Shown here piece after piece: positions 31,431 to 59,839 of a stretch of 64,000 bases of DNA. The translations under genes were made by a program, and so were the position numbers. The stretch lies in IMG/VR virus record IMGVR_UViG_3300040801_001224, positions 1 to 64,000 of that record, one strand, 5' to 3'. Numbering within the stretch: the first letter of the stretch is position 1; every line of letters begins with the position of its first letter. The notes under the pieces were generated by a model. That model worked only from the letters and a program-made list of their open reading frames with translations, was not told where the DNA came from and did not search any database.

Positions 31431-31451
31431 GAAGGGCTGAATCAGCCCTTC
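31431..31451. terminator. hairpin terminator ending the late minus-strand operon
   Basis: GAAGGGCTGA-A-TCAGCCCTTC, a near copy of 30815-30837. Confidence 0.75.
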
Positions 31452-32029
31452 TTATCTTTTTCCAACACCGCGTAAATGTTTTTTTGCACTGACTTAGTTC
31501 TGGGCATAAACGAAATTTTTAAATTATTGTGATTGGCGTATTCATCAACTGCTTTCTTTACACCATCTCTAATAAAATAATCATCACAGACAATACTGCC
31601 TGTGACCATACTCCCCCAAATTTCTAAGTCACTTTTAACGTCTTCATAAAGGTGTGAGCCATCAATATGCAATAAATCAATTGGCTTCTTAAATTGAAAG
31701 TTGATATTTTTGGACATTACTGGGGTGTATGCACGAATTAATTCAAAATTTTCAATACTTTGTGTGAATTGGTTAAAATGGTGGATGCTATACGGTATGT
31801 CTCGCATGCCGTATCCATAATCAGTATCATGGGGGAAACTTGGAACTGGATCTATAGCAGTTAATAACACAGACGGATGTTTGTTCATACCCAACGAATA
31901 AGCACTCCTGCCGTAAAAAGATCCAATTTCTACTATCCAACCATTTTTCGGAATAGCCTTAGCAAGTGATGCCAAAAATAATAATTTATCAGGATGTGAC
32001 CATCCAGGTATGTCATTGTTTATTATCAT
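31442..32029 (-). CDS. class I SAM methyltransferase (Methyltransf_24-like)
   Basis: IVEIGSFYGRS, LLHIDGSHLYE, VCDDY. Confidence 0.9.
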   Translation of the reverse strand: MIINNDIPGWSHPDKLLFLASLAKAIPKNGWIVEIGSFYGRSAYSLGMNKHPSVLLTAIDPVPSFPHDTDYGYGMRDIPYSIHHFNQFTQSIENFELIRAYTPVMSKNINFQFKKPIDLLHIDGSHLYEDVKSDLEIWGSMVTGSIVCDDYFIRDGVKKAVDEYANHNNLKISFMPRTKSVQKNIYAVLEKDKKG

Positions 32030-33360
32030 TTCTTTATAATAATCGCCAGGTCGTCACACCCATAACGCTCGCCCGTATTCAGCGTAAGCCCATTCTCTTC
32101 AGCATATTCATCCACAGCTCTAGAAGCATCTGGAAAATCATGGTTGTTATAATCGTCAACAACAATGATGCCGCCCTTCTTCATTCTCGAATGCATCGTG
32201 TCTAGATACTTCTTGGTATCTTCATAGGTGTGGCCAGCATCCGCAAACAAAGCATCAACACTATCTTCTTCAATGTCTAGTATTTGCTCATCTAAATCAC
32301 CAGTATAGATCTCCATATTTTCATGCTCGCCTACATGACGCTTAAATAACTTCAATCCATAGCGATCAGTTTTCCTAAACTTGCCTTCAAATGGATTTTC
32401 AGCCATTATTTCAGATAACAATGTCCCACCCTTCTTCGGTAAGAAGTCATAACATTTCAGTTTAACTGACGAATCTCTGCGGTTATTAGCAAGTACATAT
32501 GTACTTCTTCCAACCCACGTACCTAATTCAACTATTGTAGAATTTCTAGGTAAGAATCTTGCTACTACTGCCAGGTAATACAATTTGTCAAGACTAGTCC
32601 ATCCAGGAATATCTTCGTTAATATCAAAATGCTTTGTGATTGGGCTCGCATATATTGGCTCATTAGATTTCCCAATGGCATGTTTAATGCCATATCTATT
32701 TAACAACTCATGAACCATTGTGTATGCCTTAGGTGTCACTGGCATCTGTTTTTTAATTAATTCTGCATCTACAGATAAAGTGACATCGACATCATCAGCA
32801 AATAACCTAATCAACGTAAACGGATCTTCAGATAACTCGTCATATGTTATACTTGGGTAGTCGTTGTTGATCGTATACGCTTGTTTGAAAAACTTAAACA
32901 TTAAGTGATAATCAATTTCAGAAAGTTTAACGCCGTCAAGTGCTGTGAATGTGTTGATAGTATGTAAGTTAATAATGACTACATTATACTTCCTTTTTAA
33001 CTCACCCAGCAAATCATGTGCTGTTTTGTGAAACAAACCAGGGTATAAGTAAAAAGCAAATGATTTTTTCTCTTTAATAATCTGTTCGTTGATGTGCCAT
33101 AGTCTTGAACCCACCTCGTTGTGTGGGTCTTCAAATCTTTCATGATCAATATATGTCATTACACCATCCATCATTTTGACACGTCGATCATCTTTATCAG
33201 CATCTATTTCAAATAATCCACGGCAGTCAGATTTTTGAAATTTATCTCCGTAGATTTCTTTTAAGTATGACTGAACAACCGCCACTGCGTATTCGGCACC
33301 TGAATTTGGTGCCGACTCAATACATACGACTGTTGGTTTCTTTGGATTAATTTTTTTCAT
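32026..33360 (-). CDS. sulfotransferase-like N-terminal domain fused to a Methyltransf_24-like domain
   Basis: SAPNSGAE and ITYDELSEDP; IVELGTWVGRST, LFADAGHTYE, IVVDDY; start MKKINPK. Confidence 0.8.
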   Translation of the reverse strand: MKKINPKKPTVVCIESAPNSGAEYAVAVVQSYLKEIYGDKFQKSDCRGLFEIDADKDDRRVKMMDGVMTYIDHERFEDPHNEVGSRLWHINEQIIKEKKSFAFYLYPGLFHKTAHDLLGELKRKYNVVIINLHTINTFTALDGVKLSEIDYHLMFKFFKQAYTINNDYPSITYDELSEDPFTLIRLFADDVDVTLSVDAELIKKQMPVTPKAYTMVHELLNRYGIKHAIGKSNEPIYASPITKHFDINEDIPGWTSLDKLYYLAVVARFLPRNSTIVELGTWVGRSTYVLANNRRDSSVKLKCYDFLPKKGGTLLSEIMAENPFEGKFRKTDRYGLKLFKRHVGEHENMEIYTGDLDEQILDIEEDSVDALFADAGHTYEDTKKYLDTMHSRMKKGGIIVVDDYNNHDFPDASRAVDEYAEENGLTLNTGERYGCDDLAIIIKK

Positions 33361-33361
33361 T

Positions 33362-34585
33362 TTATTTCCTTGTGTTACCGTAGTGAACAACCTTGACACC
33401 TTCAATATCTTCTTGACGTCTCCAAGGGTCAATAATCACACTGCCTTCAACTGGCGAGAAGTCTGATTCAGCTTCACTCTTACTCACACCTGCTTCTTGC
33501 TTAAAGTATGTTACGTCATAGTTATGTGCTAACAAGTATACTGCTGGACCTAGGTCTGCTGGTGGTGTGTCACCTGTCATTGGATCCAAATAATATAATG
33601 GTTGCTTGCCTTCGATAAACGCACCTGTTAGAATGCTTGGTGAACCGAACTCATAATCTACACCTGGTTTAAATGCTTTGCCAACAATAACGCAAGGCAT
33701 GTCGTATTTTAACATTGCCTCTGCCATATTCTTGGCTTGCTTTTCACGTGCGTCCATAATAGCGTGGAACAAGTCATAGCCTAAGTTCTGTTCTTGTGCC
33801 ATCCAACGTAGGGCAATGTTGTCACGTGGGTGACATGAACCGCCATCTCCCATACCTGCTGTCATATACTTTGGTCCCATAATACGCTGGTCACTCATTG
33901 CTAGTGCGTTAGTCACTACATCTACATTCATGTTACCCAAACGTTCCGCAACGTCCTGTATCATATTTACTAGGCCTAGTTTAGCACTAATGAACGTATT
34001 GTAAAATACTTTTGTGGCTTCCATCTCTTCCCAAGTACCTACAACATAACGTGGATCGTTACGCATAATAGTTCTGTAGAACTCAATAAGCTCCTTTGCG
34101 TCACCAGTTTCGCTACCATCTTCAGTACCAATCATTACCATTTCTGGATGAATCATATCCCATGCCACTGTGCCTTGTGCGATTAGATACGGATTGTAAA
34201 TGAAACGTGCGTTTGTAATTAGCTCAACAAATTCACGTCGAGTTGTGCCTGGCATTACAGTACTGATAAGAACAACTAACTGTTCTGGATTGGCATGTTT
34301 GTTGATTTCTTTTAGTACTTCCTCAACAATATGATAGCTGAAATCTTTTGGCTCTAAGTGGCTTGTGGGATCTCTACCATCATACGCAGGATCATGTGGG
34401 GTTGGTACAGCGATAAAGATCATATCACGATCCTTAACTGCTTCTTCAATAGTTGGTACCATGTCGAAGTTCTCTGGAGTACGTTCCTCCAAGTCATAGC
34501 CCAATACGTGATGGCCGCCACGTGCCATCTCTTGAGCGCATTCTAGTCCTAGTTGGCCACAGCCAATCATTGCTACTTTAGTCAT
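33362..34585 (-). CDS. ugd: UDP-glucose/GDP-mannose 6-dehydrogenase family
   Basis: GCGQLG, IAVPTP, STVMPGTT, GGSCHPRD with catalytic Cys; start MTKVAMIG after SD AAGGAG. Confidence 0.92.
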   Translation of the reverse strand: MTKVAMIGCGQLGLECAQEMARGGHHVLGYDLEERTPENFDMVPTIEEAVKDRDMIFIAVPTPHDPAYDGRDPTSHLEPKDFSYHIVEEVLKEINKHANPEQLVVLISTVMPGTTRREFVELITNARFIYNPYLIAQGTVAWDMIHPEMVMIGTEDGSETGDAKELIEFYRTIMRNDPRYVVGTWEEMEATKVFYNTFISAKLGLVNMIQDVAERLGNMNVDVVTNALAMSDQRIMGPKYMTAGMGDGGSCHPRDNIALRWMAQEQNLGYDLFHAIMDAREKQAKNMAEAMLKYDMPCVIVGKAFKPGVDYEFGSPSILTGAFIEGKQPLYYLDPMTGDTPPADLGPAVYLLAHNYDVTYFKQEAGVSKSEAESDFSPVEGSVIIDPWRRQEDIEGVKVVHYGNTRK

Positions 34586-37283
34586 TGTTTTTCTCCTTAA
34601 ATATTTCAATTTGTCTACGTAGTTCTTCTACGAATAATTCTAATCTTTTCCATTCATTAGGCTCATTGTCGTACGTTGAATGGTCGACCCAGTTTATATA
34701 TTCATTCCATTCTTCTTTTCGCCATGTCTCTTTGTGAGTTATTGACGAAAACAATTTCTGTGTGTAACCTTTTTGACCTAACGTCATAACTTTCTTTCTC
34801 ATATTCAATGCTTTAATTGGCTTTTCCGTTATAAAGGGTTCTGGAAATGTTTCGCCAAACTCTGTCTCTACAGCAACGACAAAATCACATGCGTTGTAGT
34901 ATGTTGGGTCGTATTCAGTAGTGTGTGCTTGATAAGGCTTGAACTCGCTAACGTCCAGTGTTAGTGGAAGTGTCAATTTATCCATTCCTTCTTTTATTTT
35001 TCGTTTTAGCTCTTCCGGCAATGTATATATATTGTATAAATCGGCAACTTTGTGATGAGAAAAATTGTTATCAATTAAGTCACCGAAATAAGACACATGG
35101 CCGTACTCTAGTAGATTGTAATAAGAAAGTAGGCCGATTAATGCTGTTCTGTGTGGACGAGTTTTGCCTGTAAACAATGTGTAGACTTTATGTTCTACAT
35201 TTTTCACTTGGGGCGTTGGCTGATATACTTGCTTGTTATCAACAAAATGATCTTTGTAATCTATTACCAAGCCTTTCATTAGGCATATTTCTTCACTAAC
35301 CGCGTTGTGTCCAGATTTGTGGCCGATTACCATTACATTAGACAAATCATCATAATCTTTTAATTCATCATATATTTTGTCATAAACAATTTCTTTAGAA
35401 AAATCAATAATAATTTTCTTAAAAGGATTTGTCTTAATAATGTGATGTAACTTGGCTATATCGGATTCTTGGTATAAGTTGCTAATAACATCGCACTCGT
35501 CGTTGTCCAAAGATAGATCTAATATAAAGCTAATCTTAGGCTCATATGTCAATACATAAGAAAATTGATCATCAAGTAAATTCTTTAGTGATGTGAAATT
35601 ACTATTTCTTTTAATGAACTTTTTGTCAAGAAATACTTTTCTATTATGCTCGAGTACATCCTGCATCTCAGTAATCATTTGACACTTTTCTTCATGTGGC
35701 AATTTTGTTAATCTTTCCACCTCATCCATAATAGCCTGTATACGTTGATGGCCATCTTTAACATCATCGTATGATTCATTAATCCAAGGACTAAATGTTT
35801 TAAATCCCATGTCACGTAACATCCTTAGGAACCCATGACAGCCCGTCACAATAAACGGATGCTTATATAATATTGGTTTAAATATTTTTTCTGTTGGGAA
35901 TTCGTCGTCATGGAAAAAGAATGTTTCGTTCACTAAGCTGAAGAATGACTTTTCATAAAAATCAACAGGCGTGAATGTGGTGGCTTGATTTTGGGTTGGA
36001 TCAATTTCATCTATGTATATACTGTCGATATCCTTGAGAATGTCGTAGTACTCATCAGCCACTTCCTTGCTCCACATAGGATCAGGCTCTGCGTACTTAT
36101 CCTTATAATTCAATGTTCTCATTAAGTGATTTTGTCTGTTTTCGTGTAAATTAAAATAACTTACATAGTTGTCATCTATTATATCACGCTTAATCATTTC
36201 AGCAACAATCGCCGCTCTATGACTACGTAATACCCTGTTAAACGATAAAAATGTTTTCTCCTTTTTGTCTAACCTAGAACAATCAGGAGTGTCTTCTCTG
36301 CCTTCAACACCCTGTGTCCAGTCAGCAATATATGGGCCATAAGAATAGCATTTTCTTAATTTTGATTTTTCAATTAATCGCTTACACACACTTCCAGTGA
36401 CAATAACTAAATCTTCCTCGATGTTCTTACCCATGTCCTCAAACACTTCAATTAAAAAGTCTTCTGCTCTTCCCATGTGATAAAAACCTTCTGGATAAGC
36501 GTTTAGAATAATTTTTTTATTTAGTCTTAGATTTTCACGCAACTCTTCTTCATAGCGTGGAATAGCACAAGCAATCATTGACTCGAATATTTTTACACCC
36601 GGTATCACTCGATCGTTTCTTTTGCCGACGATATATTCAACAGGATCCCACCTAAACTTTTCGATATGATCGTAATCTTCTTGTAAATCAGATTTGAATA
36701 AATGGAATATCAAGTTCATAAACTGATCTTCAATTGCTTGCTGAGCTTCTTCTAAATTGTTGTGTACCGAGTAAAAGCCTGCGTATATTGCCATCGCAAC
36801 GCTAGTTCCTGATATTTTGTAGCCGTCAACATTAATGTTGGTTCCTGGAGCATAAACATCGATATTCCCAACGCTATTGTGGCTCGCTATCTCATGACTC
36901 TTGTTGTATGACCCAACAGTTATTACATCAGGATGACATGCCGGAGATAGAGTATTGATATCTAATCCTGCGTTACCTGCGGCCACTATAAATGTAAACT
37001 TATCTTTTAACGAATCTATTTTTTCATCGATGTCTTTATTGCGATAAACAGTTAGTGATATGGTAATTATTCCACTATCATAAGTATCACGCAAATAGTC
37101 TAGAGCTGTCAATATTGTGTTATTATCAGGATGATATCCTAACTCAATTAATTTGATATTAGCATTCGGGTTTATAGAGCTAATAATTGTATGTAAGTTT
37201 TTGCCGTGATTACTCCCGTTATCTTGGCCAAAAGACTTTTCAACATCTAGATTAGTAAACCCTGTATCTAAAATAAATATCAC
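34578..37283 (-). CDS. S8 subtilisin-like peptidase fused to two glycosyltransferase-like domains
   Basis: ILDTG, NHG, AAGN, SGTSVA; two repeats of R.HR...VxET...TEK..K. Confidence 0.75.
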   Translation of the reverse strand: MIFILDTGFTNLDVEKSFGQDNGSNHGKNLHTIISSINPNANIKLIELGYHPDNNTILTALDYLRDTYDSGIITISLTVYRNKDIDEKIDSLKDKFTFIVAAGNAGLDINTLSPACHPDVITVGSYNKSHEIASHNSVGNIDVYAPGTNINVDGYKISGTSVAMAIYAGFYSVHNNLEEAQQAIEDQFMNLIFHLFKSDLQEDYDHIEKFRWDPVEYIVGKRNDRVIPGVKIFESMIACAIPRYEEELRENLRLNKKIILNAYPEGFYHMGRAEDFLIEVFEDMGKNIEEDLVIVTGSVCKRLIEKSKLRKCYSYGPYIADWTQGVEGREDTPDCSRLDKKEKTFLSFNRVLRSHRAAIVAEMIKRDIIDDNYVSYFNLHENRQNHLMRTLNYKDKYAEPDPMWSKEVADEYYDILKDIDSIYIDEIDPTQNQATTFTPVDFYEKSFFSLVNETFFFHDDEFPTEKIFKPILYKHPFIVTGCHGFLRMLRDMGFKTFSPWINESYDDVKDGHQRIQAIMDEVERLTKLPHEEKCQMITEMQDVLEHNRKVFLDKKFIKRNSNFTSLKNLLDDQFSYVLTYEPKISFILDLSLDNDECDVISNLYQESDIAKLHHIIKTNPFKKIIIDFSKEIVYDKIYDELKDYDDLSNVMVIGHKSGHNAVSEEICLMKGLVIDYKDHFVDNKQVYQPTPQVKNVEHKVYTLFTGKTRPHRTALIGLLSYYNLLEYGHVSYFGDLIDNNFSHHKVADLYNIYTLPEELKRKIKEGMDKLTLPLTLDVSEFKPYQAHTTEYDPTYYNACDFVVAVETEFGETFPEPFITEKPIKALNMRKKVMTLGQKGYTQKLFSSITHKETWRKEEWNEYINWVDHSTYDNEPNEWKRLELFVEELRRQIEIFKEKNND

Positions 37284-38281
37284 TTATTAATCTCTCTCAA
37301 CTCATTTAATTCTGCTTCAGTAACATACTTGCCGGTGCGTGGCAAGCCAGTATATGTTGCCTTAAAAAATTTGCTGGCGTCTTCATTAAACTCAGCAATT
37401 TCCATATCCAATCCTTTACGTAAACGTCTACCTAAATCAGCAATCTCGTTTAGTAATAGATTATTATCCCATGCGTAACCGGTCTTATAACACTTGTGTT
37501 CTGAACTTGACAAAGCAAACTTTTCTTCTATGTTTTCTTTCCAGTATGTATTCAAGTATTCAAAGTCACGTACTTGGACAAAGTCCCAGTCTGTTAATGT
37601 TGTTAGGTAACAACCTAAACGTGTTCCGTAAATAGCCCATAAACCATTTGGCACATCAGCACCCACAGTTGCCCAAACCAATAGGCGTGTGTAGTTACCG
37701 TGCCAGATCTGTTTGCGGAAATTTTCTGGTTCTACCCTGTCACCGCGATCCAAGCTCATCTTCACGCCTTCACGGAAGCCTGCTCGAAACGCCTGAAGTG
37801 GTGACCCGTTGTTGTATGTAGTGCAAAAACAATTGTTCATCTGTACGTATGTGTCTGCCCAACAAAAATCCACTTGGCCGTTGGGGTCGTTGGGGTCGGC
37901 AGCCTCGTGGGTTCTCATATTCATTACATACTCAACGGGCCAGCACTTCAAACCTCCATTGCCATACTCTAATGCGTTTATGGCGTTTGTTGCTGACCAT
38001 GAGATAACTTTATCCTTAAATTTCTCATGTTCGAAATTTATTTCCTGATCAAAGAATTTGACGTCTACAATGTTGTCTGCATCGACACCAATGAAGCGAT
38101 CAGTTTCTGATAATTGTGCGGCCGCTTTATGTGCCGCATCACTACCCTCGACACCATGTACACGTTTGGCCCATGGCACCTTGGCCAGTAAGTCTGCGTA
38201 GTTTTCTTCACAATTTGGCTCATCATAAGATATGAATATCACATCAAGATCAGAAATCAAAGTTTTATTTTCTTTATCCAT
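37280..38281 (-). CDS. putative glycosyltransferase (GT-A fold)
   Basis: DVIFISYDEPN, AHKAAA, VDADN (DxD), AFRAGFREGVK. Confidence 0.8.
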   Translation of the reverse strand: MDKENKTLISDLDVIFISYDEPNCEENYADLLAKVPWAKRVHGVEGSDAAHKAAAQLSETDRFIGVDADNIVDVKFFDQEINFEHEKFKDKVISWSATNAINALEYGNGGLKCWPVEYVMNMRTHEAADPNDPNGQVDFCWADTYVQMNNCFCTTYNNGSPLQAFRAGFREGVKMSLDRGDRVEPENFRKQIWHGNYTRLLVWATVGADVPNGLWAIYGTRLGCYLTTLTDWDFVQVRDFEYLNTYWKENIEEKFALSSSEHKCYKTGYAWDNNLLLNEIADLGRRLRKGLDMEIAEFNEDASKFFKATYTGLPRTGKYVTEAELNELREINK

Positions 38282-39104
38282 TATGCTCTCCTCTGAGAAA
38301 TCTGGTCCATTCGGGGAAATTTTCAGAAATACATCTTTTGACCACAGTGTCTCTATGTATGTTATACTTTTCAGCTATTTCAGTAAGAAAAAGTTCTTTG
38401 TCTTCAATAATGTATATAAATTTTGACGCTTTTCCTAGCGAGCTTTTTTTCATTTTTTCTTTTGTATTCTCGCTGTGTTTTTTTCCTAACATGGGAGGCT
38501 GTCTATTTTTGTTAGACTCAGATCTACTTTTACGTAACTCTCGTGCCTTTTCTTCACCGTACGCTTCTTCGTATGTTTTACCCTTGGTGGGATGATTATT
38601 TCTCACTGCTTCTGATATTTTCTTTCTAGACTCATTAGTATGTGATCTCCCCTCCATGCCTATATTAATTTGCTTTTTTCTCTTTTCTTTTATTTTGTCT
38701 ATTGTTTCTTCACTATGTGTCTTTCCATACATGCCATTTTTTGTTCCCTCGACTTTGTGGCCTTGGCCATACATACCATTTTTATCCCCAACTTGCCTAC
38801 CTTTCATAAATACACTCATTGTTTTTGATAATTTTGTCCTTAGCCAACCATATACCTTATTGCTACGCCGATAGCCTCCAGTCATTTTGATTACCGCACA
38901 GATTAGTCCGTGATGTCCAGGATATATTTTTACTAACAGTTGGTGTGCCACAAAATGTTCTTCTGGAGTCAACCTTACTAAGTTATCGGGATCATCACTA
39001 CCACCCATACACCGTGGTACAATGTGATGCCTTTCACTATACCCTTCTAATAATCTGCTTTTTGCTCTTTCAATCAATAAGTTATAGTGTTTTTGGTAAT
39101 CCAT
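38274..39104 (-). CDS. HNH homing endonuclease with NUMOD3 repeats
   Basis: ERHHIVPRCMGG..NLVRLTPEEHFVAH; GKTHSEET and GKKHSENT. Confidence 0.9.
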   Translation of the reverse strand: MDYQKHYNLLIERAKSRLLEGYSERHHIVPRCMGGSDDPDNLVRLTPEEHFVAHQLLVKIYPGHHGLICAVIKMTGGYRRSNKVYGWLRTKLSKTMSVFMKGRQVGDKNGMYGQGHKVEGTKNGMYGKTHSEETIDKIKEKRKKQINIGMEGRSHTNESRKKISEAVRNNHPTKGKTYEEAYGEEKARELRKSRSESNKNRQPPMLGKKHSENTKEKMKKSSLGKASKFIYIIEDKELFLTEIAEKYNIHRDTVVKRCISENFPEWTRFLRGEHNG

Positions 39105-39107
39105 ATA

Positions 39108-39767
39108 TTATTCCCCAATAATTTTATACCCATAGCGGTTTAGTACTCTGCGAGTGAATATACTGTAGTCCTTAATGTCAACTGTATAATCCATCACAAC
39201 TTCACCGTCACTTAACATTTTATTCACTGGTACATTGAATGATTCTATTAGCATAGATGGATCATTCCGTGTAGTACAGTAAAATTTTAAAATCTTTAAT
39301 CCATGTATTGTCGCCTGATGTATGTCATCTACTGATTCAAGTATGTTTTCACGCACACCATCAACAAATCTAAATGTTATTGATTTATTTTTCTCATCAG
39401 CAACAATCTCTAATTCATAATCTGCCTCGTAGCCTTCTGGCACTTCAGTTAAGAAACGATCCATAGTTCTCACATAGGATATTTCACTATTACGTTTCTT
39501 AACATAGTACTCGTTAACTTTGCCTTCCCGCTTTTCTATCTTGTATTTGTTTGGCGCAAGCTCGCCTGTAATAAACTTGTATACTTCTGCTATTGGCAGT
39601 TTAGTACTCATAAACTTTTCATGATGATCACTGTCCTGTATTGGCGATATACATTTAATATTTCCAGCATCGTCAAAGTAAACATACATTAACTTCTTGG
39701 CTTCTTCTTCGTGCTGTTGACGAAACTGCTCCACTGCTTCCTGGAAGGCATTATCTTTGTTAGCCAT
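39108..39767 (-). CDS. hypothetical protein of the glycosylation operon
   Basis: Start MANKDNAF; operon context. Confidence 0.8.
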   Translation of the reverse strand: MANKDNAFQEAVEQFRQQHEEEAKKLMYVYFDDAGNIKCISPIQDSDHHEKFMSTKLPIAEVYKFITGELAPNKYKIEKREGKVNEYYVKKRNSEISYVRTMDRFLTEVPEGYEADYELEIVADEKNKSITFRFVDGVRENILESVDDIHQATIHGLKILKFYCTTRNDPSMLIESFNVPVNKMLSDGEVVMDYTVDIKDYSIFTRRVLNRYGYKIIGE

Positions 39768-40608
39768 TATAACGTTCCTCCAATTTAGCAATGATATCGT
39801 CTGTTAGCCATGACTTAATGTGGTAATGGAATGGCAGTAATTGTTTATAGTTGCCTACCTTTAGAACACCGTCTGGACGATAATACGTTGGTATGTTTTC
39901 AACCCAGTTTTCTGTAATCTGGTTCTTGGGGATGTTCATCATCTGACTTTTCATATGAACAAATGATGGGAAATTTAAATCATTCATTGTGTCCTCAGTA
40001 CCCAGAATATGTTGTGCTAAACTAAACACAATGTCGCCTGACACGTTCTTTGGACGATATGTTGGGATGAATTCAAAGTAAAACTTCTCCCAATTCTGAT
40101 ATATGATTCTCGCCATTTCAAACATCTCTTCAGCTTCTTTGCTCTTGTTGAAATACATGAAAGCTGTGTAGACATTTGGTAAATTATTTTCACTGATTGC
40201 TCGTCTGTAATGATCTGACGTAGCAACTAAACCCTTGTAGTTATGTACTGATGTCGTGAAATATACATTCTTTGTGCTTAAGAAATCCCACCAGTGATCA
40301 ACACTTGATGTGAATATCATGTCTGAATCTAGAACAACTGTTTCATCAAATGGAGACATCTCAAAGTACTTCCATTTGTTTTGAATCTTCCATGTCTCAT
40401 CTTTAGCATCATCATTGCCTGGAATTTCTATAATATGATCAAATGCGTATTCCCATTCTCTAGGAACGTCTTTTTTATTGGTGACACAAACCGCAAAATC
40501 TTGTACCTCACTCTGCGAGTTCTTGATGCTGAGTGCTAGTGCGTATGCTTGGCGAACATAGTCAATGCCTGGCGTGTTCTGTGCGATGGTTATATATCCC
40601 TTAGACAT
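39760..40608 (-). CDS. putative glycosyltransferase (GT8-like, GT-A fold)
   Basis: SPFDETVVLDSDM (DxD); FVHMK. Confidence 0.85.
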   Translation of the reverse strand: MSKGYITIAQNTPGIDYVRQAYALALSIKNSQSEVQDFAVCVTNKKDVPREWEYAFDHIIEIPGNDDAKDETWKIQNKWKYFEMSPFDETVVLDSDMIFTSSVDHWWDFLSTKNVYFTTSVHNYKGLVATSDHYRRAISENNLPNVYTAFMYFNKSKEAEEMFEMARIIYQNWEKFYFEFIPTYRPKNVSGDIVFSLAQHILGTEDTMNDLNFPSFVHMKSQMMNIPKNQITENWVENIPTYYRPDGVLKVGNYKQLLPFHYHIKSWLTDDIIAKLEERYNG

Positions 40609-41488
40609 CGTATATCTCCAACAGTTTATCCGCGTGACGTAAAATACTCCACTTGTTCATAACGTGAAGGTCAATGTCCTTGACTCTTGATAATAGGAAT
40701 TTTGTCTTCTGATCTGGCTTCTGCATCAATACTGTTAGATCGTTCTCACCATTAACACTAACAAAGTCGTCATTATCAAATAGTTTTAGAAGTGACGGCA
40801 CTGGCATACGTGGCACTGATTTCATGTCCTGGTAGTCGTTTAGTTGGTGTACAGCAATAGCAAAAGCCCAGTCATTTCTAAACATTCTGTTCGGGAAATT
40901 ATATTGCTGGTTATAGAACTCATAATTGTCGAATACATGCTTGACTGTTTTGAATGTCATCTCTGCTTCTAATGACTTGCGAAAATATATAGCAGTTGCC
41001 CAGTATAAACGAATGCTGAAAGGGTCAATCCAGGGATCCATCATCTGGCGTGAATACAGTGCTTCCTGTGTATTATCTGATATCATGAAGTCATGTACTG
41101 ATCCCCAACAATGATTTAGAGCGTCACTCATTATTAGATAGTCAGCATCAATAAACAGTGTTTCTTCATATGGGCTTAACTCATATGCCGCCCAGTGGTT
41201 ACAGTTATAGAAGGAAAGTTTTGATGTCTTGCTTGATGTGTCTCTGTAAATACGCTTATTGTTGCGGTGGAAGTCGTAATCTTGTTCTACTGGAATGATA
41301 TTTTCAAAAGCACGATCAAGCATTTCTTGCCCGTTGTCTTTGATTGCCCATTCCAGTGTGCCTGGGTCTGTAATTAGAGTTGTACCAACGCCCAAGTTCT
41401 TTTTAACCATGAAGGCGTTAATGATCGCTATCTTTATATAGTCAATCTCTTTGTTGTTATGTGCGAACATGATTACGCCGCGTGACAT
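40601..41488 (-). CDS. putative glycosyltransferase (GT8-like, GT-A fold)
   Basis: SPYEETLFIDADY; RNDWAFAIA; paralogue of its neighbour. Confidence 0.85.
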   Translation of the reverse strand: MSRGVIMFAHNNKEIDYIKIAIINAFMVKKNLGVGTTLITDPGTLEWAIKDNGQEMLDRAFENIIPVEQDYDFHRNNKRIYRDTSSKTSKLSFYNCNHWAAYELSPYEETLFIDADYLIMSDALNHCWGSVHDFMISDNTQEALYSRQMMDPWIDPFSIRLYWATAIYFRKSLEAEMTFKTVKHVFDNYEFYNQQYNFPNRMFRNDWAFAIAVHQLNDYQDMKSVPRMPVPSLLKLFDNDDFVSVNGENDLTVLMQKPDQKTKFLLSRVKDIDLHVMNKWSILRHADKLLEIYDV

Positions 41489-41489
41489 A

Positions 41490-41852
41490 CTACTCTCCTA
41501 AATCAAGGTCTAAAACTGATTTAACAGAACGTGACTTACGAATCTTCATTACTTCTTCGTGTACATCCTGGGTAACATTCGTGTAGCGATCTAAAATTGT
41601 ATCTAAGAATTCTTTTAAATCAGTGACAAGAATTGGTGTATTATTTTTGTCTAATATAACAGCTTCATTTCGTTCTTTGCGGATTAATAAATCAACAAAG
41701 TTAATTAACTCCATGGTAATTGGAAATGTGCCACCGTTAACTGAATGTAATAATTCAACTTCCATGCGATGTTGCGCTTGGTCAAGTTGATTATTTAGAG
41801 TTGTCCTGTAGTTGGCAAATTTAATTGCCTCTTCTATTCTTATATCTTCCAT
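41490..41852 (-). CDS. hypothetical protein, first gene of the glycosylation operon
   Basis: GGTFPIT...ILDKNNTPI; late promoter upstream. Confidence 0.85.
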   Translation of the reverse strand: MEDIRIEEAIKFANYRTTLNNQLDQAQHRMEVELLHSVNGGTFPITMELINFVDLLIRKERNEAVILDKNNTPILVTDLKEFLDTILDRYTNVTQDVHEEVMKIRKSRSVKSVLDLDLGE

Positions 41853-41855
41853 GTC

Positions 41856-41905
41856 GACCCCTATGTCTGTATGTACGTATATTTATACAGAAAAATGTAG
41901 GGGTC
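41856..41905 (-). promoter_or_regulatory. late promoter TATAAATA inside an RBS-sequestering hairpin
   Basis: GACCCCTA...TAGGGGTC inverted repeat; TATAAATA at 41880-41887 on the minus strand. Confidence 0.75.
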
Positions 41906-41921
41906 TATGAAATATTGAGTA

Positions 41922-42863
41922 TTAACTACCTGTGAATACTGTTGTAGCGTATGTTGGGTCAGTTAGGGTGATAGCACCTGATGTAATTCTCTGGTCCACG
42001 TAGCTATTTAGTGTTCCATCTAATATACGATCTGGAGCTGGGTCAGTTGTAAATTCAACTTGGAACTCTAGGATGTTTCTCTGTGCGTCAGTAAATCTAG
42101 CACTCACTGTGATAGCTTCTGAACTATAATAAACCCCACCGCCAGCATCTACGTTCTTTTGTGCTAATTCCTGGAATGTAGTTGACAGTTCATAATAGCC
42201 GATTGGATTAGTAGAACCACTACTAGAACTAGTAGTCTCCCAATCAAATATCACTGTACCCATATCTGATAGGGCTTGTTGCCAATCCGTTTCTTCACCG
42301 TCTGGATTACTTGCGCCTGGCGTATATTCTCCACTCCAGCGTATCTCACCACCAGAGTTAAAGAAATAACGTGCTTCGTTGCCGTTAGCAAATGTTACCT
42401 GGAATGTATGTGTAACACTTGTTGTCCAAGGATCAGTTCGTGTTTCAGACAGTTTGCCACCACCCGCTGTGGTAGTCGTCTGTCCTGCGTCAACAGCTAG
42501 GCGTCCCGCACGTACTTGGTTGATTAGAGTATGTAGGTTTGAGTTTCCGTTAGTTCCGTCAAAAGCCTCAATTAAGTCTCCAACAGAAACGCTTGTAGGA
42601 ATGTTGCCGGTTGCGTTGCCTATGTGTGTAGCACAATCGTGAAATGCTTCAAACAAAGCAGTCCATTGTGCCGCAGTAACTACGTCACCAGGTGATACAG
42701 TAGCAATGGCTGGTGTCTGGCCGTAACCATATGTGCCATTTGTTAGGGTGAAGTCCCCTGAGTTTGTATCATTGTATACTTCGTTTAATAGCGCAACTAA
42801 CTCGTTAAAATCATCATTCGACGGGTTAGAAGCTTCGATTATGCCTGATGACTGATAAGCCAT
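41922..42863 (-). CDS. virion structural protein (tail/baseplate associated)
   Basis: T/S/G-rich; GYGQ, VTAAQW, ARYFFNSGGEI; late module context. Confidence 0.75.
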   Translation of the reverse strand: MAYQSSGIIEASNPSNDDFNELVALLNEVYNDTNSGDFTLTNGTYGYGQTPAIATVSPGDVVTAAQWTALFEAFHDCATHIGNATGNIPTSVSVGDLIEAFDGTNGNSNLHTLINQVRAGRLAVDAGQTTTTAGGGKLSETRTDPWTTSVTHTFQVTFANGNEARYFFNSGGEIRWSGEYTPGASNPDGEETDWQQALSDMGTVIFDWETTSSSSGSTNPIGYYELSTTFQELAQKNVDAGGGVYYSSEAITVSARFTDAQRNILEFQVEFTTDPAPDRILDGTLNSYVDQRITSGAITLTDPTYATTVFTGS

Positions 42864-43664: not shown

Positions 43665-43931
43665 TTATAAATTTGCTACAGCTTCGTCACCAGCCAATTT
43701 GGCTGCTTCTTCAACTGCTTTCTTCACTTTTGTTTCAGCACGTAGACGAACTACTTTCTCAAGCTGTGATGACCAAAGCTGAATAAAGCCTTCGCATTTT
43801 TGCTCGTCAGTTAGGTTCATCTCCGACTGGTAATTTGTAATTGTATCGATAAGCTCAACAAATTTTTCGTCTGTATAAGTCTTATCTAATAAAGACTCGA
43901 TAATAGTCTTTGCTCTTGAATAACTACTCAT
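43665..43931 (-). CDS. hypothetical protein (possible fibre accessory)
   Basis: Lies between fibre genes; overlap coupling. Confidence 0.7.
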   Translation of the reverse strand: MSSYSRAKTIIESLLDKTYTDEKFVELIDTITNYQSEMNLTDEQKCEGFIQLWSSQLEKVVRLRAETKVKKAVEEAAKLAGDEAVANL

Positions 43932-45426
43932 TTATTTTTTTCTCCAATTCGTTGATCATATCCATCATCTTATTCATTTTTACTTCTTGACTTGATAGTC
44001 TTCTGCGTAAATTCTCATTCTCTTTTGATAATTCTTTCACTGCGTTTATTAGTGGCAGAACAAACATTTCACGACTAACACCCTGTGTTTTATCCTTGTC
44101 GCTGTTTACTATGTGTCCGCCAAAAGTATCACAACCTGCGTCGTCTAATGACTTCTTAACGTCCTGCGCGATTAAGCCGTGCATCACAGTTTTTGTATCA
44201 ATCTGGTAATCTTCACGTTCTTTCCAAGTATAAGTTACTGGTCGTAAGCTATTAATGAAGTCTAAACCTAGATTATCATCTTGAATGTTTGTCTTAAAAC
44301 GTTCGTCTGAAGTACTAATCCAAGAACCAGACGTTAGGAAGTTTGCGTATATATGGCCACTTGCGTTACCAATATGTACACGGCCGTCTGCTGTGCCGTC
44401 AAGGCCGTGACCAATAACAATCTGATCAGAACCATTGATACTTGAATCTGCACTGTTACCAATAATAATGTTGTCGCTTAAACTATTGCTTAAACCCGCA
44501 AAGTGACCAATGGCAATGACATCATCAGCTGATACTAAGTTACTTCCTGCTCGTGTACCTATGGCAGTATTATCGTTGCCCGACACTGAAGCAGATAGTG
44601 CTTGCGCTCCGATGCCAACATTGTCTTTGCCCTGTGAATTCGCCATTGAAAACGCACCGATAGCAACAGACCCTGAATGATCAAAGTTTTCTGGGTTGGC
44701 TTGTTCCATTGACTTGTAGCCAATGGCAACGTTTAGATATGAATCAGTCATCTCTTCAGCCGCTTGTGAGCCAATGACTGTGTTTTTATTTCTTCTAAAA
44801 GTTAGGCCTGGGTTACCCCAAGCAGGGAATCCACCAACTAGGTTACGTCCTGCTCTAAATCCTACTGCCACCGTATTGTCATTTGCTACAGTATTCACTA
44901 ATGATTCTGCACCAATTGCCACACACGCCCATGTATCTGCTATTGCCGGATTGCCCAGAGCATTCCAGCCCACCGCTGTATTAGATGTTTCAATGTTTAC
45001 GGTAACGTCAGCCGGTTGGTGACCCGGAATACCAAGGCCTGAATATTTAACACCACCTGACGTCCATTCTGTACCATCATTAATGTATAGTAGATCTGTG
45101 TCAGGGTTATACCATAATGAGCCCGCATCGCCTGTTGGTTCAGTTGTTGATACTGAAGCATCACCACCGATTGGAATAAACGCTGAGCCGTTATATACCT
45201 GTAAGCTTTCTGTCGCAGTATTGTACCACAGCTGACCCAATGTCGCACCTGATGGTGGAACATTGTGGGCAAAGTTTTCAAGCTGATGGAAGAATGCTGT
45301 GGCAACTTCATCGCCATAGCCAATGTAATTCTGTCCTACCAATGGTATACTGAAATCAGTATTTACAGTATTGTCTTGAATACTGAAGTTTGATACGCCA
45401 TCGCTCTTTGTAATAATATATGCCAT
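43924..45426 (-). CDS. tail fibre with C-terminal intramolecular chaperone (peptidase S74)
   Basis: N-terminus paralogous to the 42865 gene; N.A(I/V)G repeats; SDERFKTNI...LRPVTY...GLIAQDV and a coiled coil. Confidence 0.88.
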   Translation of the reverse strand: MAYIITKSDGVSNFSIQDNTVNTDFSIPLVGQNYIGYGDEVATAFFHQLENFAHNVPPSGATLGQLWYNTATESLQVYNGSAFIPIGGDASVSTTEPTGDAGSLWYNPDTDLLYINDGTEWTSGGVKYSGLGIPGHQPADVTVNIETSNTAVGWNALGNPAIADTWACVAIGAESLVNTVANDNTVAVGFRAGRNLVGGFPAWGNPGLTFRRNKNTVIGSQAAEEMTDSYLNVAIGYKSMEQANPENFDHSGSVAIGAFSMANSQGKDNVGIGAQALSASVSGNDNTAIGTRAGSNLVSADDVIAIGHFAGLSNSLSDNIIIGNSADSSINGSDQIVIGHGLDGTADGRVHIGNASGHIYANFLTSGSWISTSDERFKTNIQDDNLGLDFINSLRPVTYTWKEREDYQIDTKTVMHGLIAQDVKKSLDDAGCDTFGGHIVNSDKDKTQGVSREMFVLPLINAVKELSKENENLRRRLSSQEVKMNKMMDMINELEKKINE

Positions 45427-46025
45427 TAGTTAACTTGAATCCTTAATGAATATTCAATTTCAATCTCACGGTTTGCCGCTTTTTTAACTGGGTGGAATAG
45501 TACATGCGTTAACATTAGTCCATATGGACTTCCCACTTCACCTGCTGAGTAAAGAGCAATTTCGTCAAATACGTAGTCACTATCGAAGCTCGCTGGATTA
45601 GTATCCGAACCGTCTGAAGCGTCTTGGTCTGCTGGCTCACCGTATGTCAATGTGCAGGTAACAACAATGTCAGTGTAGTTAGATGTGCTTTCTACAACTT
45701 CAATGAAGTTTTCTGCATCGTTTACGCTTACGTCTTTCTTATATGTTTCGTTATATAGTGCCGCAGTTTCGTCTTTAATATCAGAAACGTTAGCTGGCTT
45801 ATACGCAATAGCACCTGTAGCGTCAATTTGTGTGCCACCGTTACCAAATACCATGTACTTAAGATGTGCTGTGGTAAGTCCTGCTAATGACTCCGCTAGA
45901 GCGTTAGCCATGTTGCCGTTGTGTATAGCATTTGGTGAGTCTGCTAGAATTTGACCCGTATGCTTATCTCTTATAATAAGATGACCTTTTACAAAAGGAT
46001 TTACATTATCTTTTGGCATTGCCAT
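45426..46025 (-). CDS. virion structural protein (baseplate associated)
   Basis: NAIH, FGNGGT, VFDEIAL, LTHVLFHPVKK..NR..EIEYSLRI. Confidence 0.75.
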   Translation of the reverse strand: MAMPKDNVNPFVKGHLIIRDKHTGQILADSPNAIHNGNMANALAESLAGLTTAHLKYMVFGNGGTQIDATGAIAYKPANVSDIKDETAALYNETYKKDVSVNDAENFIEVVESTSNYTDIVVTCTLTYGEPADQDASDGSDTNPASFDSDYVFDEIALYSAGEVGSPYGLMLTHVLFHPVKKAANREIEIEYSLRIQVN

Positions 46026-46678: not shown

Positions 46679-46679
46679 T

Positions 46680-46796
46680 CTATCCTCGTTTTTCCAGTAT
46701 AGTTTTATTCTTGGTCTTGTCCTTGATAACGATTTTATCAATAACTTTGCCATCAATTAGTAGAGTATTCTTGTTGTCTTTTTTATTTGTAATCAT
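46680..46796 (-). CDS. 38-aa protein (not in ORF track)
   Basis: MITNKKDNKNTLLIDGKVIDKIVIKDKTKNKTILEKRG; ATG 6 nt after ATAAATA; resembles the N-terminal strand of the 45426 gene. Confidence 0.6.
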   Translation of the reverse strand: MITNKKDNKNTLLIDGKVIDKIVIKDKTKNKTILEKRG

Positions 46797-59777: not shown

Positions 59778-59839
59778 CTTATTATCCTTTGTTATATATT
59801 AACTTATTTATCAACCAAATTAACCACTGTTATAATAGG

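What the first reader, a model, noticed from the sequence alone, without database searches (positions are those of the whole stretch)
31442..41852. Late glycan synthesis and decoration operon directly behind the fibre genes
Seen: two GT8-like and one other GT-A glycosyltransferase, a double GT-like domain protein, a nucleotide-sugar dehydrogenase, two Methyltransf_24-like domains and a sulfotransferase-like domain. All are co-oriented with the tail genes and headed by a late promoter. Inference: late timing and position favour glycosylation of virion proteins with a methylated, uronic-acid-containing glycan over DNA modification; host-surface remodelling is the alternative.
Basis: partly seen in the sequence, partly recalled or inferred. 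Interest (0 to 1): 0.6.

Follow-up and report, generated by a model that had tools for sequence, protein, structure and literature searches.

The report
Jumbo-phage glycosylation operon behind fibre genes
A 328-kb uncultured T4-like jumbo phage carries, right after its tail-fibre genes, a late-promoter operon of sugar-transferring and sugar-decorating enzymes; its five-gene core is conserved in thousands of environmental phage contigs but has never been characterised, and what it glycosylates is still open.

Summary
On the minus strand, 41852 to 31442, ten tightly packed genes (junctions -8 to +3 nt) follow the fibre genes.

- Structure models confirm two paralogous GT8-like retaining GT-A enzymes (p2, p3) and a third GT-A enzyme (p6).
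- Family scans confirm a UDP-glucose-dehydrogenase-type enzyme (p8) and two Methyltransf_24/TylF-like domains (p9 C-terminus, p10).
- The 901-aa protein (p7) does hold a duplicated domain. That domain belongs to a very large family with no Pfam model, linked to UDP-glucuronate supply by fusion and co-occurrence.
- The sulfotransferase claim found no support.
- One gene (p5) is an HNH homing endonuclease, not a sugar enzyme.
- TATAAATA 28 nt before p1 fits this phage's late promoter class, [G/T]ATAAATA.

New finding: P1-GT8-GT8-P4-P6 is a fixed module behind the fibre genes in about 70 of 80 related loci and in Ralstonia phage RsoM2USA, followed by a variable tailoring island. In most relatives the module has a sigma70-type promoter, so late timing is not general. 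DNA glycosylation is unlikely here: no hydroxymethylase, ThyX or TGT was found. Virion-protein glycosylation is the best guess (about 0.4); host-envelope remodelling remains a serious rival.

The parts
41880..41887 (-). Late-class promoter element TATAAATA, 28 nt upstream of the p1 ATG
   Evidence: Genome-wide, GATAAATA occurs 99 times with 65% within 60 nt upstream of a start, and TATAAATA 32 times with 34%; control 8-mers give 10-14%. The motif heads the portal/capsid operons and the gp25-like baseplate gene.
41856..41905 (-). Leader hairpin. The arms enclose the promoter and the 3' arm covers the Shine-Dalgarno sequence
   Evidence: RNA fold gives -20.8 kcal/mol, z -4.3, with 0 of 200 shuffles as stable. 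In 62 distinct relatives the SD window is paired in 76%, against 45% for fibre-gene leaders. The regulatory meaning is inferred.
41490..41852 (-). p1 (P1 family), 120 aa, conserved small helical protein of unknown role
   Evidence: Found in 73 of 81 loci, always first in the module. Alignment A4. No Pfam, PHROG or PDB match.
40601..41488 (-). p2, GT8-like retaining GT-A glycosyltransferase (first paralogue)
   Evidence: Paralogue of p3 at E 1e-12. DxD kept in 69 of 72 orthologues. 35-49% identical to RsoM2USA ORF353 and metagenome orthologues.
39760..40608 (-). p3, GT8-like retaining GT-A glycosyltransferase (second paralogue)
   Evidence: AF2 pLDDT 93.7. Foldseek and VIA top hits are glycogenin, GlyE, LARGE1 and LgtC. 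Profile against PDB gives glycogenin at E 0.03. Invariant D94xD96 and H218. 1643 homologues, none with a Pfam domain.
39108..39767 (-). p4 (P4 family), about 219 aa from the ATG at 39767, unknown fold and role
   Evidence: Found in 68 of 81 loci between the second GT8 and P6. No family or PDB match.
38274..39104 (-). p5, HNH + NUMOD3 homing endonuclease. A selfish insert, not part of the pathway
   Evidence: NUMOD3 1.7e-14 and phrog_655 3.8e-60. Absent from all 80 related loci.
37280..38281 (-). p6 (P6 family): N-terminal GT-A domain (residues 5-177) plus a helical C-terminal domain. The most conserved gene of the module
   Evidence: AF2 pLDDT 83.6. VIA Z 10.7-8.7 to GT-A transferases. Foldseek hits HAS, TarP and RmlT. 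Invariant D67xD69. At least 8000 homologues at about 63% identity with no Pfam.
36759..37283 (-). p7 residues 1-175: compact subtilase (Peptidase_S8) domain with the Asp, His, Asn and Ser motifs present
   Evidence: Pfam 1.5e-7, 31.5 bits against a cut-off of 21.8. phrog_3677 protease. 46% identical to the N-terminus of P0124, where it is fused to a radical SAM enzyme. Catalytic motifs were read from the sequence.
35604..36566 (-). p7 first copy of the 'fam9' domain, a candidate UDP-GlcA-linked glycosyltransferase-like domain
   Evidence: 9312 representative proteins at E<=1e-3. No Pfam hit in 32 members and no PDB hit. Profile match 4.8e-106. Linked to UGDH by fusion, by co-occurrence in 12 of 12 loci and by adjacency in a bacterium.
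34614..35426 (-). p7 second, divergent copy of the fam9 domain
   Evidence: BLASTP 6e-8 to the first copy. hhalign to family profile A3 gives 98.9%, E 1.4e-17, over 257 columns.
33362..34585 (-). p8, nucleotide-sugar 6-dehydrogenase (UDP-glucose dehydrogenase type)
   Evidence: PF03721 2.1e-19, PF00984 1.9e-17 and phrog_9148 2.8e-92. 62.6% identical to Synechococcus phage Bellamy gp227 and 51% to HTVC008M. TIGR03026 scores 158 bits, below its 189.8 cut-off.
32548..33360 (-). p9 N-terminal half, unassigned.
   Evidence: No Pfam family at E<=10, and only chance-level PDB hits.
32149..32532 (-). p9 C-terminal Methyltransf_24 / TylF-like SAM-dependent O-methyltransferase domain
   Evidence: PF13578 1.2e-15 and PF05711 2.5e-5.
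31442..32029 (-). p10, stand-alone Methyltransf_24 / TylF-like methyltransferase
   Evidence: PF13578 9e-12 and PF05711 2e-3. 32% identical to a gene in the same position in L010.
31431..31451 (.). GC-rich hairpin at the convergence with the plus-strand early block. It marks the operon end
   Evidence: The T-run lies on the plus-strand side only.
41922..42863 (-). F313, an S/T-rich fibre-associated protein immediately upstream. Candidate acceptor
   Evidence: Present in 70 of 81 loci directly before P1. Homologue of PA5oct gp360, which is annotated as found in virions by ESI-MS/MS. 22.7% S+T.

Best explanation
This is a late-transcribed operon that builds and decorates a glycan in the cytoplasm of the infected cell.

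The conserved core is P1, two GT8-like retaining transferases, P4, and the GT-A/helical protein P6. It most likely installs and extends a short glycan on a phage-encoded acceptor. The best candidate acceptor is a virion protein of the adjacent fibre block, such as F313 or the fibre proteins.

The genome-specific tail of the operon supplies and adds the decorations:
- p8 oxidises UDP-glucose to UDP-glucuronate.
- The two fam9 domains of p7 probably transfer or handle that uronic acid.
- p9 and p10 O-methylate sugars.
- The mini-subtilase on p7 is a shared N-terminal module of tailoring enzymes in this lineage. Its role, processing or docking on a protein substrate, is unknown.

Shown: folds, motifs, operon structure, promoter class, synteny, and the link between fam9 and UGDH.
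Inferred: sugar donors, order of steps, and above all the acceptor.
For: - Enzyme identities.
- Catalytic DxD motifs conserved.
- All ten proteins lack TM helices, and junctions are -8 to +3 nt, so this is one soluble cytoplasmic operon.
- The promoter is of the [G/T]ATAAATA class that also heads the baseplate, portal and capsid operons.
- The order F199-FIB-F313-P1-GT8-GT8-P4-P6 is fixed in about 70 of 80 related loci, in RsoM2USA and in 300+ kb metagenome contigs.
- The core is highly conserved in contigs whose IMG/VR record numbers differ, and in a soil phage of Ralstonia: P6 about 55-65% identical and GT8 about 50%. This fits a phage-encoded, constant acceptor better than variable host glycans.
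- The F313 homologue in PA5oct is an MS-detected virion protein.
- The best structural neighbours of p3 include enzymes that act on proteins or protein-linked glycans: glycogenin, GlyE, LARGE1, the Skp1 galactosyltransferase and UGGT.
- fam9 is tied to UDP-GlcA supply by a UGDH-fam9 fusion, by 12 of 12 co-occurrence with Fisher 4e-9, and by adjacency to UGDH, GT9 and GT2 genes in a bacterial contig.
- No ThyA/hydroxymethylase, ThyX or TGT was found in the genome.
- Precedent from the literature: mycobacteriophage virion glycosylation (Freeman et al. 2023, as cited in PMC12619734).
Against: - There is no direct evidence for any acceptor.
- In 47 of 72 relatives the module has a sigma70-type promoter, unlike the neighbouring fibre genes. 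Timing may be early or dual in most of the lineage.
- GT8 and GT-A folds also serve LPS and capsule synthesis (LgtC Z 14.2, within about 1.5 of the top hit).
- The bacterial fam9 homologue sits in an LPS-like context.
- Some relatives carry LpxO-family hydroxylase, desaturase-like and AMP-ligase genes.
- F313 S/T-richness is the same in PA5oct, which lacks the module.
- The GT nature of fam9 is inferred from context only. There is no fold model and no Pfam or PDB match.
- A complex prediction of P6 with F313 could not be run.
Confidence: 0.4

Rival explanations
1. Host-envelope remodelling. The soluble transferases act at the cytoplasmic face on LPS core, O-unit or capsule precursors. They add GlcA and methylated sugars so that infected cells or debris no longer adsorb phage (superinfection exclusion, protection of progeny), or so that the envelope changes in some other way.
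For: - GT8 is the fold of LPS/LOS transferases such as LgtC.
- A bacterial fam9 homologue lies beside Glyco_transf_9, Glycos_transf_2 and UGDH genes.
- Related UGDH-containing clusters of cyanophages and pelagiphages are treated in the literature as cell-wall/LPS genes (PMC12801897).
- Most relatives have a sigma70-type promoter.
- Relatives carry LpxO-family hydroxylase, desaturase-like and AMP-ligase genes.
Against: - The core is strongly conserved across phages from many different metagenome samples and from soil, whereas host outer glycans vary.
- There is no flippase, polymerase, initiating transferase or any membrane protein in the operon.
- The position behind the fibre genes is fixed, and in this genome the promoter is of the late class.
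- A lytic jumbo phage gains little from late LPS change.
Confidence: 0.3
2. RiPP-like or protein hypermodification system in which sugars are only one of several modifications. A phage protein or peptide (P1, P4, or a fibre protein) is processed by the subtilase, glycosylated, and in relatives also modified by radical SAM enzymes and hydroxylases.
For: - A mini-subtilase is fused to different tailoring enzymes: p7, and P0124 where it is fused to radical SAM.
- Relatives carry tandem arrays of NF033640 twitch radical SAM genes, plus other radical SAM families (SPASM was seen only in an unrelated fam9-bearing contig) and an Asp/Asn hydroxylase.
- The p6 GT-A domain resembles the SunS/ThuS peptide S-glycosyltransferases among others (Z 9.3) and carries a helical C-terminal domain.
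- P1 is a small, conserved first gene.
Against: - The window genome has no radical SAM gene at all.
- P1 shows no leader/core-like hypervariable region.
- Radical SAM, hydroxylase and aminotransferase genes also occur in ordinary sugar-nucleotide pathways.
- SunS is only one of many tied GT-A matches.
Confidence: 0.15
3. DNA hypermodification. The transferases glycosylate modified bases in phage DNA to evade restriction, as in T-even phages or SP-15.
For: - UDP-glucose dehydrogenase also occurs in Bacillus phage SP-15. From my own knowledge, SP-15 DNA carries a glucuronolactone-containing hypermodification.
- Phage GTs are known to build diverse glycans on DNA (Pyle et al. 2024, cited in PMC12619734).
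- ThyX lies just past the island in many relatives.
- Relatives have sigma70-type promoters.
Against: - The window genome has no ThyA/dCMP- or dUMP-hydroxymethylase family gene, no ThyX and no TGT/DpdA.
- No T4 alpha- or beta-glucosyltransferase family match was found, but the controls did not ring, so this is weak.
- The promoter is of the late class and the operon sits in the structural block.
- The GT8 neighbours of p3 found in the fold searches all act on proteins, protein-linked glycans or LOS; I know of no DNA-acting GT8 (own knowledge).
Confidence: 0.05

Closest known systems
Mycobacteriophage virion glycosylation cassettes (Freeman et al. 2023, Cell Host Microbe; cited in PMC12619734)
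   Same: The glycosyltransferase genes are phage-encoded, lie next to structural genes, and act in the cytoplasm. The proposed acceptors are virion proteins.
   Different: The hosts and phage lineage are unrelated. This module holds five conserved genes, including two unknown proteins, plus a variable tailoring island. Glycans on virions are shown there and not here.
GT8 retaining glycosyltransferases (glycogenin, LgtC, GlyE, LARGE1 xylosyltransferase domain)
   Same: p3, and by paralogy p2, share the GT-A fold over the whole chain (Z 14-15.7). Both have a DxD motif and p3 has a conserved downstream His.
   Different: Sequence identity is 9-14%. No Pfam PF01501 match is found, and the profile E-value to glycogenin is only 0.03. 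Donor and acceptor are unknown.
UGDH-containing sugar clusters of T4-like cyanophages and pelagiphages (Synechococcus phage Bellamy gp212-228, Pelagibacter phage HTVC008M gp156-162)
   Same: p8 is 62.6% and 51% identical to their UDP-glucose dehydrogenases. Methyltransferase and glycosyltransferase genes lie nearby.
   Different: No other operon protein has a homologue in those clusters. Those clusters carry carbamoyltransferase, NadE-like and epimerase genes and are not placed behind the fibre genes.
Ralstonia phage RsoM2USA ORFs 350-354 (annotated as hypothetical proteins)
   Same: They are true orthologues of p6, p3, p2 and p1 in the same order behind the giant structural protein and fibre genes. 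ORF351 sits in the p4 slot but gave no tblastn match to p4.
   Different: The RsoM2USA tailoring genes differ: it has a second P6 paralogue and no p7-p10 homologues. Nothing is known about their function (PMC8504454).
Chlorovirus PBCV-1 A64R and giant-virus capsid or fibril glycosylation enzymes
   Same: They are virus-encoded GT-A enzymes that glycosylate virion proteins independently of host machinery. A64R is among the p6 structural matches (Z 8.7). From my own knowledge, methylated sugars occur in those glycans.
   Different: They are eukaryotic viruses. The match is at fold level only and ties with many other GT-A enzymes and nucleotidyltransferases.

Membership tests
CAZy GT8 / Pfam Glyco_transf_8 (p2, p3) | GT-A Rossmann-like fold closest to GT8 structures | tested here: met
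   p3 model has pLDDT 93.7. VIA gives Z 15.7 to glycogenin (214 residues, rmsd 4.0), 15.4 to GlyE and 14.2 to LgtC. Foldseek gives E 2e-7.
CAZy GT8 / Pfam Glyco_transf_8 (p2, p3) | DxD metal/nucleotide-sugar motif, and a downstream His as third metal ligand | tested here: met
   D94xD96 and H218 are invariant in 32 p3 homologues. DxD is kept in 69 of 72 p2-like and 64 of 72 p3-like proteins. That H218 is the metal ligand is inferred, not shown.
CAZy GT8 / Pfam Glyco_transf_8 (p2, p3) | Significant match to the family's sequence model (PF01501) | tested here: not met
   No Pfam hit at E<=10 except Mannosyl_trans3 at 0.11. The profile against PDB gives glycogenin at only E 0.03. I therefore write 'GT8-like', not a GT8 member.
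GT-A (GT2-type) glycosyltransferase (p6) | GT-A fold with DxD | tested here: met
   Residues 5-177 give Z 10.7-8 to B4GALNT1, chondroitin synthase, STIV A197, SunS, SpsA and PBCV-1 A64R. D67xD69 is invariant. Nucleotidyltransferases of the same fold score within 1-2 Z units, so the transferase type rests on the DxD.
GT-A (GT2-type) glycosyltransferase (p6) | Match to Pfam Glycos_transf_2 or another GT model | tested here: not met
   No Pfam, PHROG or NCBIfam hit. The profile against PDB finds nothing.
UDP-glucose/GDP-mannose dehydrogenase family (p8) | N-terminal NAD-binding domain and central domain with the catalytic Cys | tested here: met
   PF03721 2.1e-19 and PF00984 1.9e-17, both above cut-off. 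A GGSCHPRD motif is seen in the sequence.
UDP-glucose/GDP-mannose dehydrogenase family (p8) | C-terminal UDP-binding domain, and a full-length score above the curated cut-off that would fix substrate specificity | tested here: inconclusive
   No PF03720 hit was listed. TIGR03026 scores 158 bits, below its 189.8 cut-off. phrog_9148 'UDP-glucose dehydrogenase' matches at 2.8e-92.
Methyltransf_24 / TylF-type sugar O-methyltransferases (p9 C-terminus, p10) | Match above the Pfam gathering score | tested here: met
   PF13578 scores 58.7 and 46.2 bits against a cut-off of 26.3. PF05711 TylF scores 24.1 (above 23) for p9 and 17.8 (below) for p10. The substrate is not testable here. PHROG labels the same family 'DNA methyltransferase'.
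Sulfotransferase (p9 N-terminus) | Match to any sulfotransferase model or structure | tested here: not met
   No Pfam family at E<=10 for residues 25-295, and only chance-level PDB hits.
Peptidase S8 subtilases (p7 residues 1-175) | Family model match and the Asp-His-Ser triad with the oxyanion Asn | tested here: met
   PF00082 scores 31.5 bits against a cut-off of 21.8. The DTG, HG, AAGN and GTS motifs are visible at residues 6, 26, 104 and 160. The domain is unusually short and its activity is untested.
Phage virion-glycosylation systems | Glycan covalently attached to virion proteins | not testable with these tools
   This needs glycoprotein staining or glycoproteomics. Only gene position and promoter class could be examined.
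T-even-type DNA glycosylation | A base-hydroxymethylating enzyme (ThyA-family) that supplies the acceptor base | tested here: not met
   PF00303 is absent from the complete 328-kb genome, and the controls rang. There is also no ThyX or TGT.
T4-like late transcription unit | The TATAAATA-type element upstream is enriched before late genes of the same genome | tested here: met
   On its own, TATAAATA in the window is at chance frequency (6 found, 6.0 expected). The evidence is the position and the genome-wide [G/T]ATAAATA pattern.

The most novel reading that the evidence does not exclude
The five-gene core plus its variable island may be a dedicated post-translational hypermodification system for tail-fibre or virion proteins of a large, almost uncultured jumbo-phage lineage. 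It would combine glycosylation with, in relatives, radical-SAM chemistry, hydroxylation and proteolysis. The fam9 domain duplicated in p7 would be a previously unrecognised family of UDP-glucuronate-dependent glycosyltransferases, with more than 9000 representative clusters and no Pfam model.
Probability: 0.2. Interest if true: 0.8.

Novelty: new variant of a known kind. Interest (0 to 1): 0.55.

Why it matters
Phage-encoded glycosylation is known for DNA (T-even phages), for host O-antigen (seroconversion) and, recently, for mycobacteriophage virions.

This is a different cassette. It has a fixed position and is very widespread: at least 8000 P6 clusters at 90% identity and about 600 IMG/VR stretches. 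None of its five core proteins, nor the fam9 domain, has a Pfam family or a described function. One cultured carrier exists, Ralstonia phage RsoM2USA, so the acceptor question can be tested directly.

If virion proteins are the target, surface glycans would be a common feature of environmental jumbo phages, with consequences for adsorption, stability and recognition. If the host envelope is the target, this would be a widespread late or early host-remodelling function. Either way the work defines several new enzyme families.

Tried and rejected
- Megablast of the operon against 50,697 phage records found no match.
- tblastn of p7 against phages found no match.
- p3 and p6 hit only RsoM2USA among cultured phages.
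- Single-sequence PDB searches for p3 and p6 found nothing. The P6 profile against PDB gave only a chance hit.
- P1 and P4 profiles against PDB gave only chance-level hits.
- The fam9 profile found nothing in Pfam or PDB. Against plasmids it hit one hypothetical protein. Cluster look-ups gave no names.
- The Bellamy and HTVC008M clusters share only the dehydrogenase with this operon.
- The 'moraphage' paper (PMC12619734) describes a different lineage, outside the T4 group with genomes up to 307 kb. I rejected it as the source of this module.
- S/T-richness of F313 as a mark of being the acceptor was rejected. Fibre proteins in general, and PA5oct gp360, which has no module, are equally S/T-rich.
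- TATAAATA frequency alone is at chance. I replaced it with the positional, genome-wide analysis.
- No RNA runs hold the locus. The DNA holders are microbial-mat metagenome runs from one study.

Full report
**Where the window comes from.** The window is the first 64 kb of a complete 328,096-bp virus record with direct terminal repeats. The DNA is held by microbial-mat metagenome runs from one study. The minus strand from about 64 kb down to 41.9 kb encodes T4-like baseplate proteins (gp6-, gp25- and gp5-like), a 2918-aa protein, and fibre or spike proteins. The genome also holds T4-type Gp23 capsid and portal genes.

**The operon.** From 41852 down to 31442 lie ten ORFs on the same strand. Using the most plausible start codons, the junctions are -8 to +3 nt, and no protein has a predicted transmembrane helix. 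The block ends at a GC-rich hairpin, where it converges with a plus-strand block of small genes.

**Checking the gene content.** Pfam recognises only part of the operon:
- p8 is a UDP-glucose/GDP-mannose dehydrogenase.
- p9 C-terminus and p10 are Methyltransf_24 domains with TylF similarity.
- p5 has HNH and NUMOD3 domains.
- The first 175 residues of p7 are a Peptidase_S8 domain.

- **p3.** It was modelled with 31 homologues at pLDDT 93.7. It aligns over its full length with GT8-clan enzymes: glycogenin Z 15.7, GlyE 15.4, LARGE1 15.2, the Skp1 galactosyltransferase 15.0, and LgtC 14.2. Foldseek gives E 2e-7. Its family profile also reaches glycogenin weakly (E 0.03). D94xD96 and H218 are invariant.
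- **p2.** It is a paralogue of p3 (E 1e-12). The DxD motif is kept in nearly all orthologues of both proteins.
- **p6.** It was modelled at pLDDT 83.6. Residues 5-177 form a nucleotide-diphospho-sugar transferase domain, with Z 10.7 to B4GALNT1 and many GT2-type enzymes including the viral A197 and A64R. It has an invariant DxD and a helical C-terminal half that finds no match.

So 'two GT8-like and one other GT-A' holds at the level of fold and motif. It does not hold as membership of the sequence families.

**p7.** Residues about 330-525 and 688-890 are similar to each other (E 6e-8). The first copy belongs to a very large family of mostly single-domain proteins of 350-450 aa, with 9312 representatives at E<=1e-3. 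That family, which I call fam9, has no Pfam model in any of 32 members tested and no PDB relative by profile search. The second copy is a divergent member (hhalign 98.9%, E 1.4e-17).

The inference rests on three independent links to UDP-glucuronate supply and on sugar-pathway contexts:
- P0125 is a natural fusion of a UDP-glucose dehydrogenase with this domain.
- Among 81 related loci, all 12 that carry the dehydrogenase also carry fam9, against 9 of 69 without it. Fisher gives 4e-9, uncorrected for relatedness, and the loci span 48-96% P6 identity.
- In a 936-kb bacterial contig, the fam9 gene lies next to a dehydrogenase, a Glyco_transf_9 gene and a Glycos_transf_2 gene.
- In a T4-like marine phage it lies among NDP-sugar epimerase, dehydratase and isomerase genes.

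The N-terminal mini-subtilase of p7 keeps the Asp, His, Asn and Ser motifs. It recurs at 46% identity fused to a radical SAM enzyme in a relative. It therefore behaves as a portable module of tailoring enzymes in this lineage.

**Claims that failed or were missed.** p5 is a homing endonuclease that is present in none of the 80 related loci. It is an insert, not a pathway gene.

**Promoter.** TATAAATA lies 28 nt before the p1 start codon. On its own the octamer is at chance frequency in the window (6 found, 6.0 expected) and in the genome (32 copies). The genome does, however, show two clear promoter classes.
- About 65 near-consensus TTGACA-N17-TATAAT sites lie almost all on the plus strand before small genes.
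- GATAAATA occurs 99 times, with 65% lying within 60 nt upstream of a start codon. Control octamers give 10-14% and TATAAATA gives 34%.

The second class heads the gp25-like baseplate gene, also at 28 nt, and the portal/capsid region operons. This matches the T4 late-promoter type, which I know from the T4 literature. The operon's promoter belongs to this late class.

The promoter sits in the loop of a stable hairpin (-20.8 kcal/mol, z -4.3) whose 3' arm covers the ribosome-binding site. This recalls T4 genes whose read-through transcripts are translationally silent. That reading is an inference. A similar pairing of the SD region recurs in 76% of 62 distinct related leaders, against 45% for fibre-gene leaders.

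**Comparative genomics.** This part changes the picture.
- p3 has 1643 homologues, and p6 has at least 8000 at about 63% identity. None has a Pfam domain, and many lie on 300-385-kb contigs.
- The only cultured carrier among 50,697 phage records is Ralstonia phage RsoM2USA. Its ORFs 354, 353, 352 and 350 are orthologues of p1, p2, p3 and p6, in the same order behind the giant structural protein and fibre genes. ORF351 occupies the p4 position, but tblastn found no similarity to p4. All are annotated as hypothetical (PMC8504454).
- In 80 IMG/VR loci fetched around P6 homologues, the order F199 - fibre (1-3 genes) - F313 (1-2 genes) - P1 - GT8 - GT8 - P4 - P6 is almost invariant. It is followed by a variable island and then a strand switch.

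The window's p7-p10 are one version of that island. Other versions hold:
- tandem arrays of NF033640 'twitch' radical SAM genes, up to 6-7 copies, and two further radical SAM families;
- an Asp/Asn-hydroxylase-family gene, a desaturase-like gene and an AMP-ligase;
- extra P6 paralogues, fam9 genes and the dehydrogenase;
- in other metagenome contigs, HAD, NTP-transferase and Methyltransf_24 genes.

The window genome itself has no radical SAM gene. PA5oct-like Pseudomonas phages have the same structural block ending with the F313 homologue gp360, which is annotated as detected in virions by ESI-MS/MS. They have no module.

**Timing in relatives.** Upstream of P1, 47 of 72 relatives carry a sigma70-type promoter and 15 carry an ATAAATA-type motif. 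The fibre genes mostly carry the ATAAATA type (18 of 28) and rarely the sigma70 type (2 of 28). The module is therefore its own transcription unit. Late timing is supported for this genome only.

**What is glycosylated?**
- *DNA is unlikely here.* The complete genome lacks any ThyA-family hydroxymethylase, ThyX or TGT/DpdA, and the controls rang for all three. The T4 alpha/beta-glucosyltransferase searches were uninformative.
- *For a phage-encoded, probably virion, acceptor.* The position is fixed at the end of the fibre block. This genome uses a late-class promoter. The core is highly conserved in contigs from many different samples and in a soil phage of Ralstonia. p3 is close to enzymes that work on proteins or protein-linked glycans. 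There is a fused protease domain. There are precedents for virion glycosylation.
- *For the host envelope.* LPS transferases share the GT8 fold. The bacterial fam9 gene sits in an LPS-like context. Most relatives have sigma70 promoters. Some islands carry lipid-type tailoring genes.

I put virion-protein glycosylation at about 0.4, host-envelope remodelling at 0.3, a broader RiPP-like protein hypermodification at 0.15, and DNA at 0.05. That the operon makes a decorated glycan at all I hold at about 0.8.

**Novelty and limits.** The kind of system, a phage glycosylation cassette, is known. This cassette is not: none of its five core families, nor fam9, has a Pfam family or a described function. 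The limits are these:
- No fold model for fam9, P1, P4 or the p9 N-terminus.
- No expression data, because no RNA run holds the locus.
- Gene calls in related loci are my own simple ORF calls.
- The co-occurrence statistics ignore phylogeny.

Noticed in passing
window 38274-39104 (-) and 46001-46756 (-): Two homing-endonuclease-type ORFs are inserted in the late block. An HNH+NUMOD3 gene lies between p4 and p6 and is unique among 81 loci. A second gene (phrog_314-like) lies between F199 and the 2918-aa protein.
   Followed up: partly
window 2500-30600 (+) and genome-wide: There are about 65 near-consensus TTGACA-N17-TATAAT promoters, nearly all on the plus strand before small genes. Many carry a conserved ACCACTTT in the spacer, which may be a regulatory or UP-like element of the early class.
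   Followed up: partly
genome-wide, e.g. window 59778-59812 (-): GATAAATA, rather than TATAAATA, is the dominant late-type promoter octamer of this phage. It occurs 99 times, with 65% lying just upstream of start codons.
   Followed up: yes
window 41856-41905 (-): A stable leader hairpin has the promoter in its loop and the Shine-Dalgarno sequence in its 3' arm. Comparable SD-pairing hairpins, some followed by a T-run, recur before P1 in relatives.
   Followed up: partly
L010-L089, downstream of P6 (e.g. L068:10912-12282): Tandem arrays of up to 6-7 paralogous NF033640 'twitch domain' radical SAM genes follow the module in 51 of 80 related loci. Their substrate is unknown.
   Followed up: partly
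window 46823-55579 (-): A 2918-aa protein has patchy similarity to RsoM2USA ORF361, which is over 288 kDa and was assigned to a virion protein band in PMC8504454. It sits at the same place as PA5oct gp355. It always lies upstream of the fibre/GT block.
   Followed up: no
window 43924-45426 (-): The 500-aa fibre/spike protein ends with a sequence that, read by eye, resembles the self-cleaving intramolecular chaperone (Peptidase_S74-type) of tail spikes. No family scan was run for this.
   Followed up: no
L014, L017-L021 etc., just past the island: In many relatives a ThyX gene lies immediately after the module, mostly on the opposite strand. The window genome has neither ThyX nor ThyA.
   Followed up: partly
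window 31442-33360 (-): PHROGs labels the Methyltransf_24 family of p9 and p10 (phrog_2675) 'DNA methyltransferase'. Pfam places them with TylF-type sugar O-methyltransferases. The label may be an annotation error worth checking.
   Followed up: no
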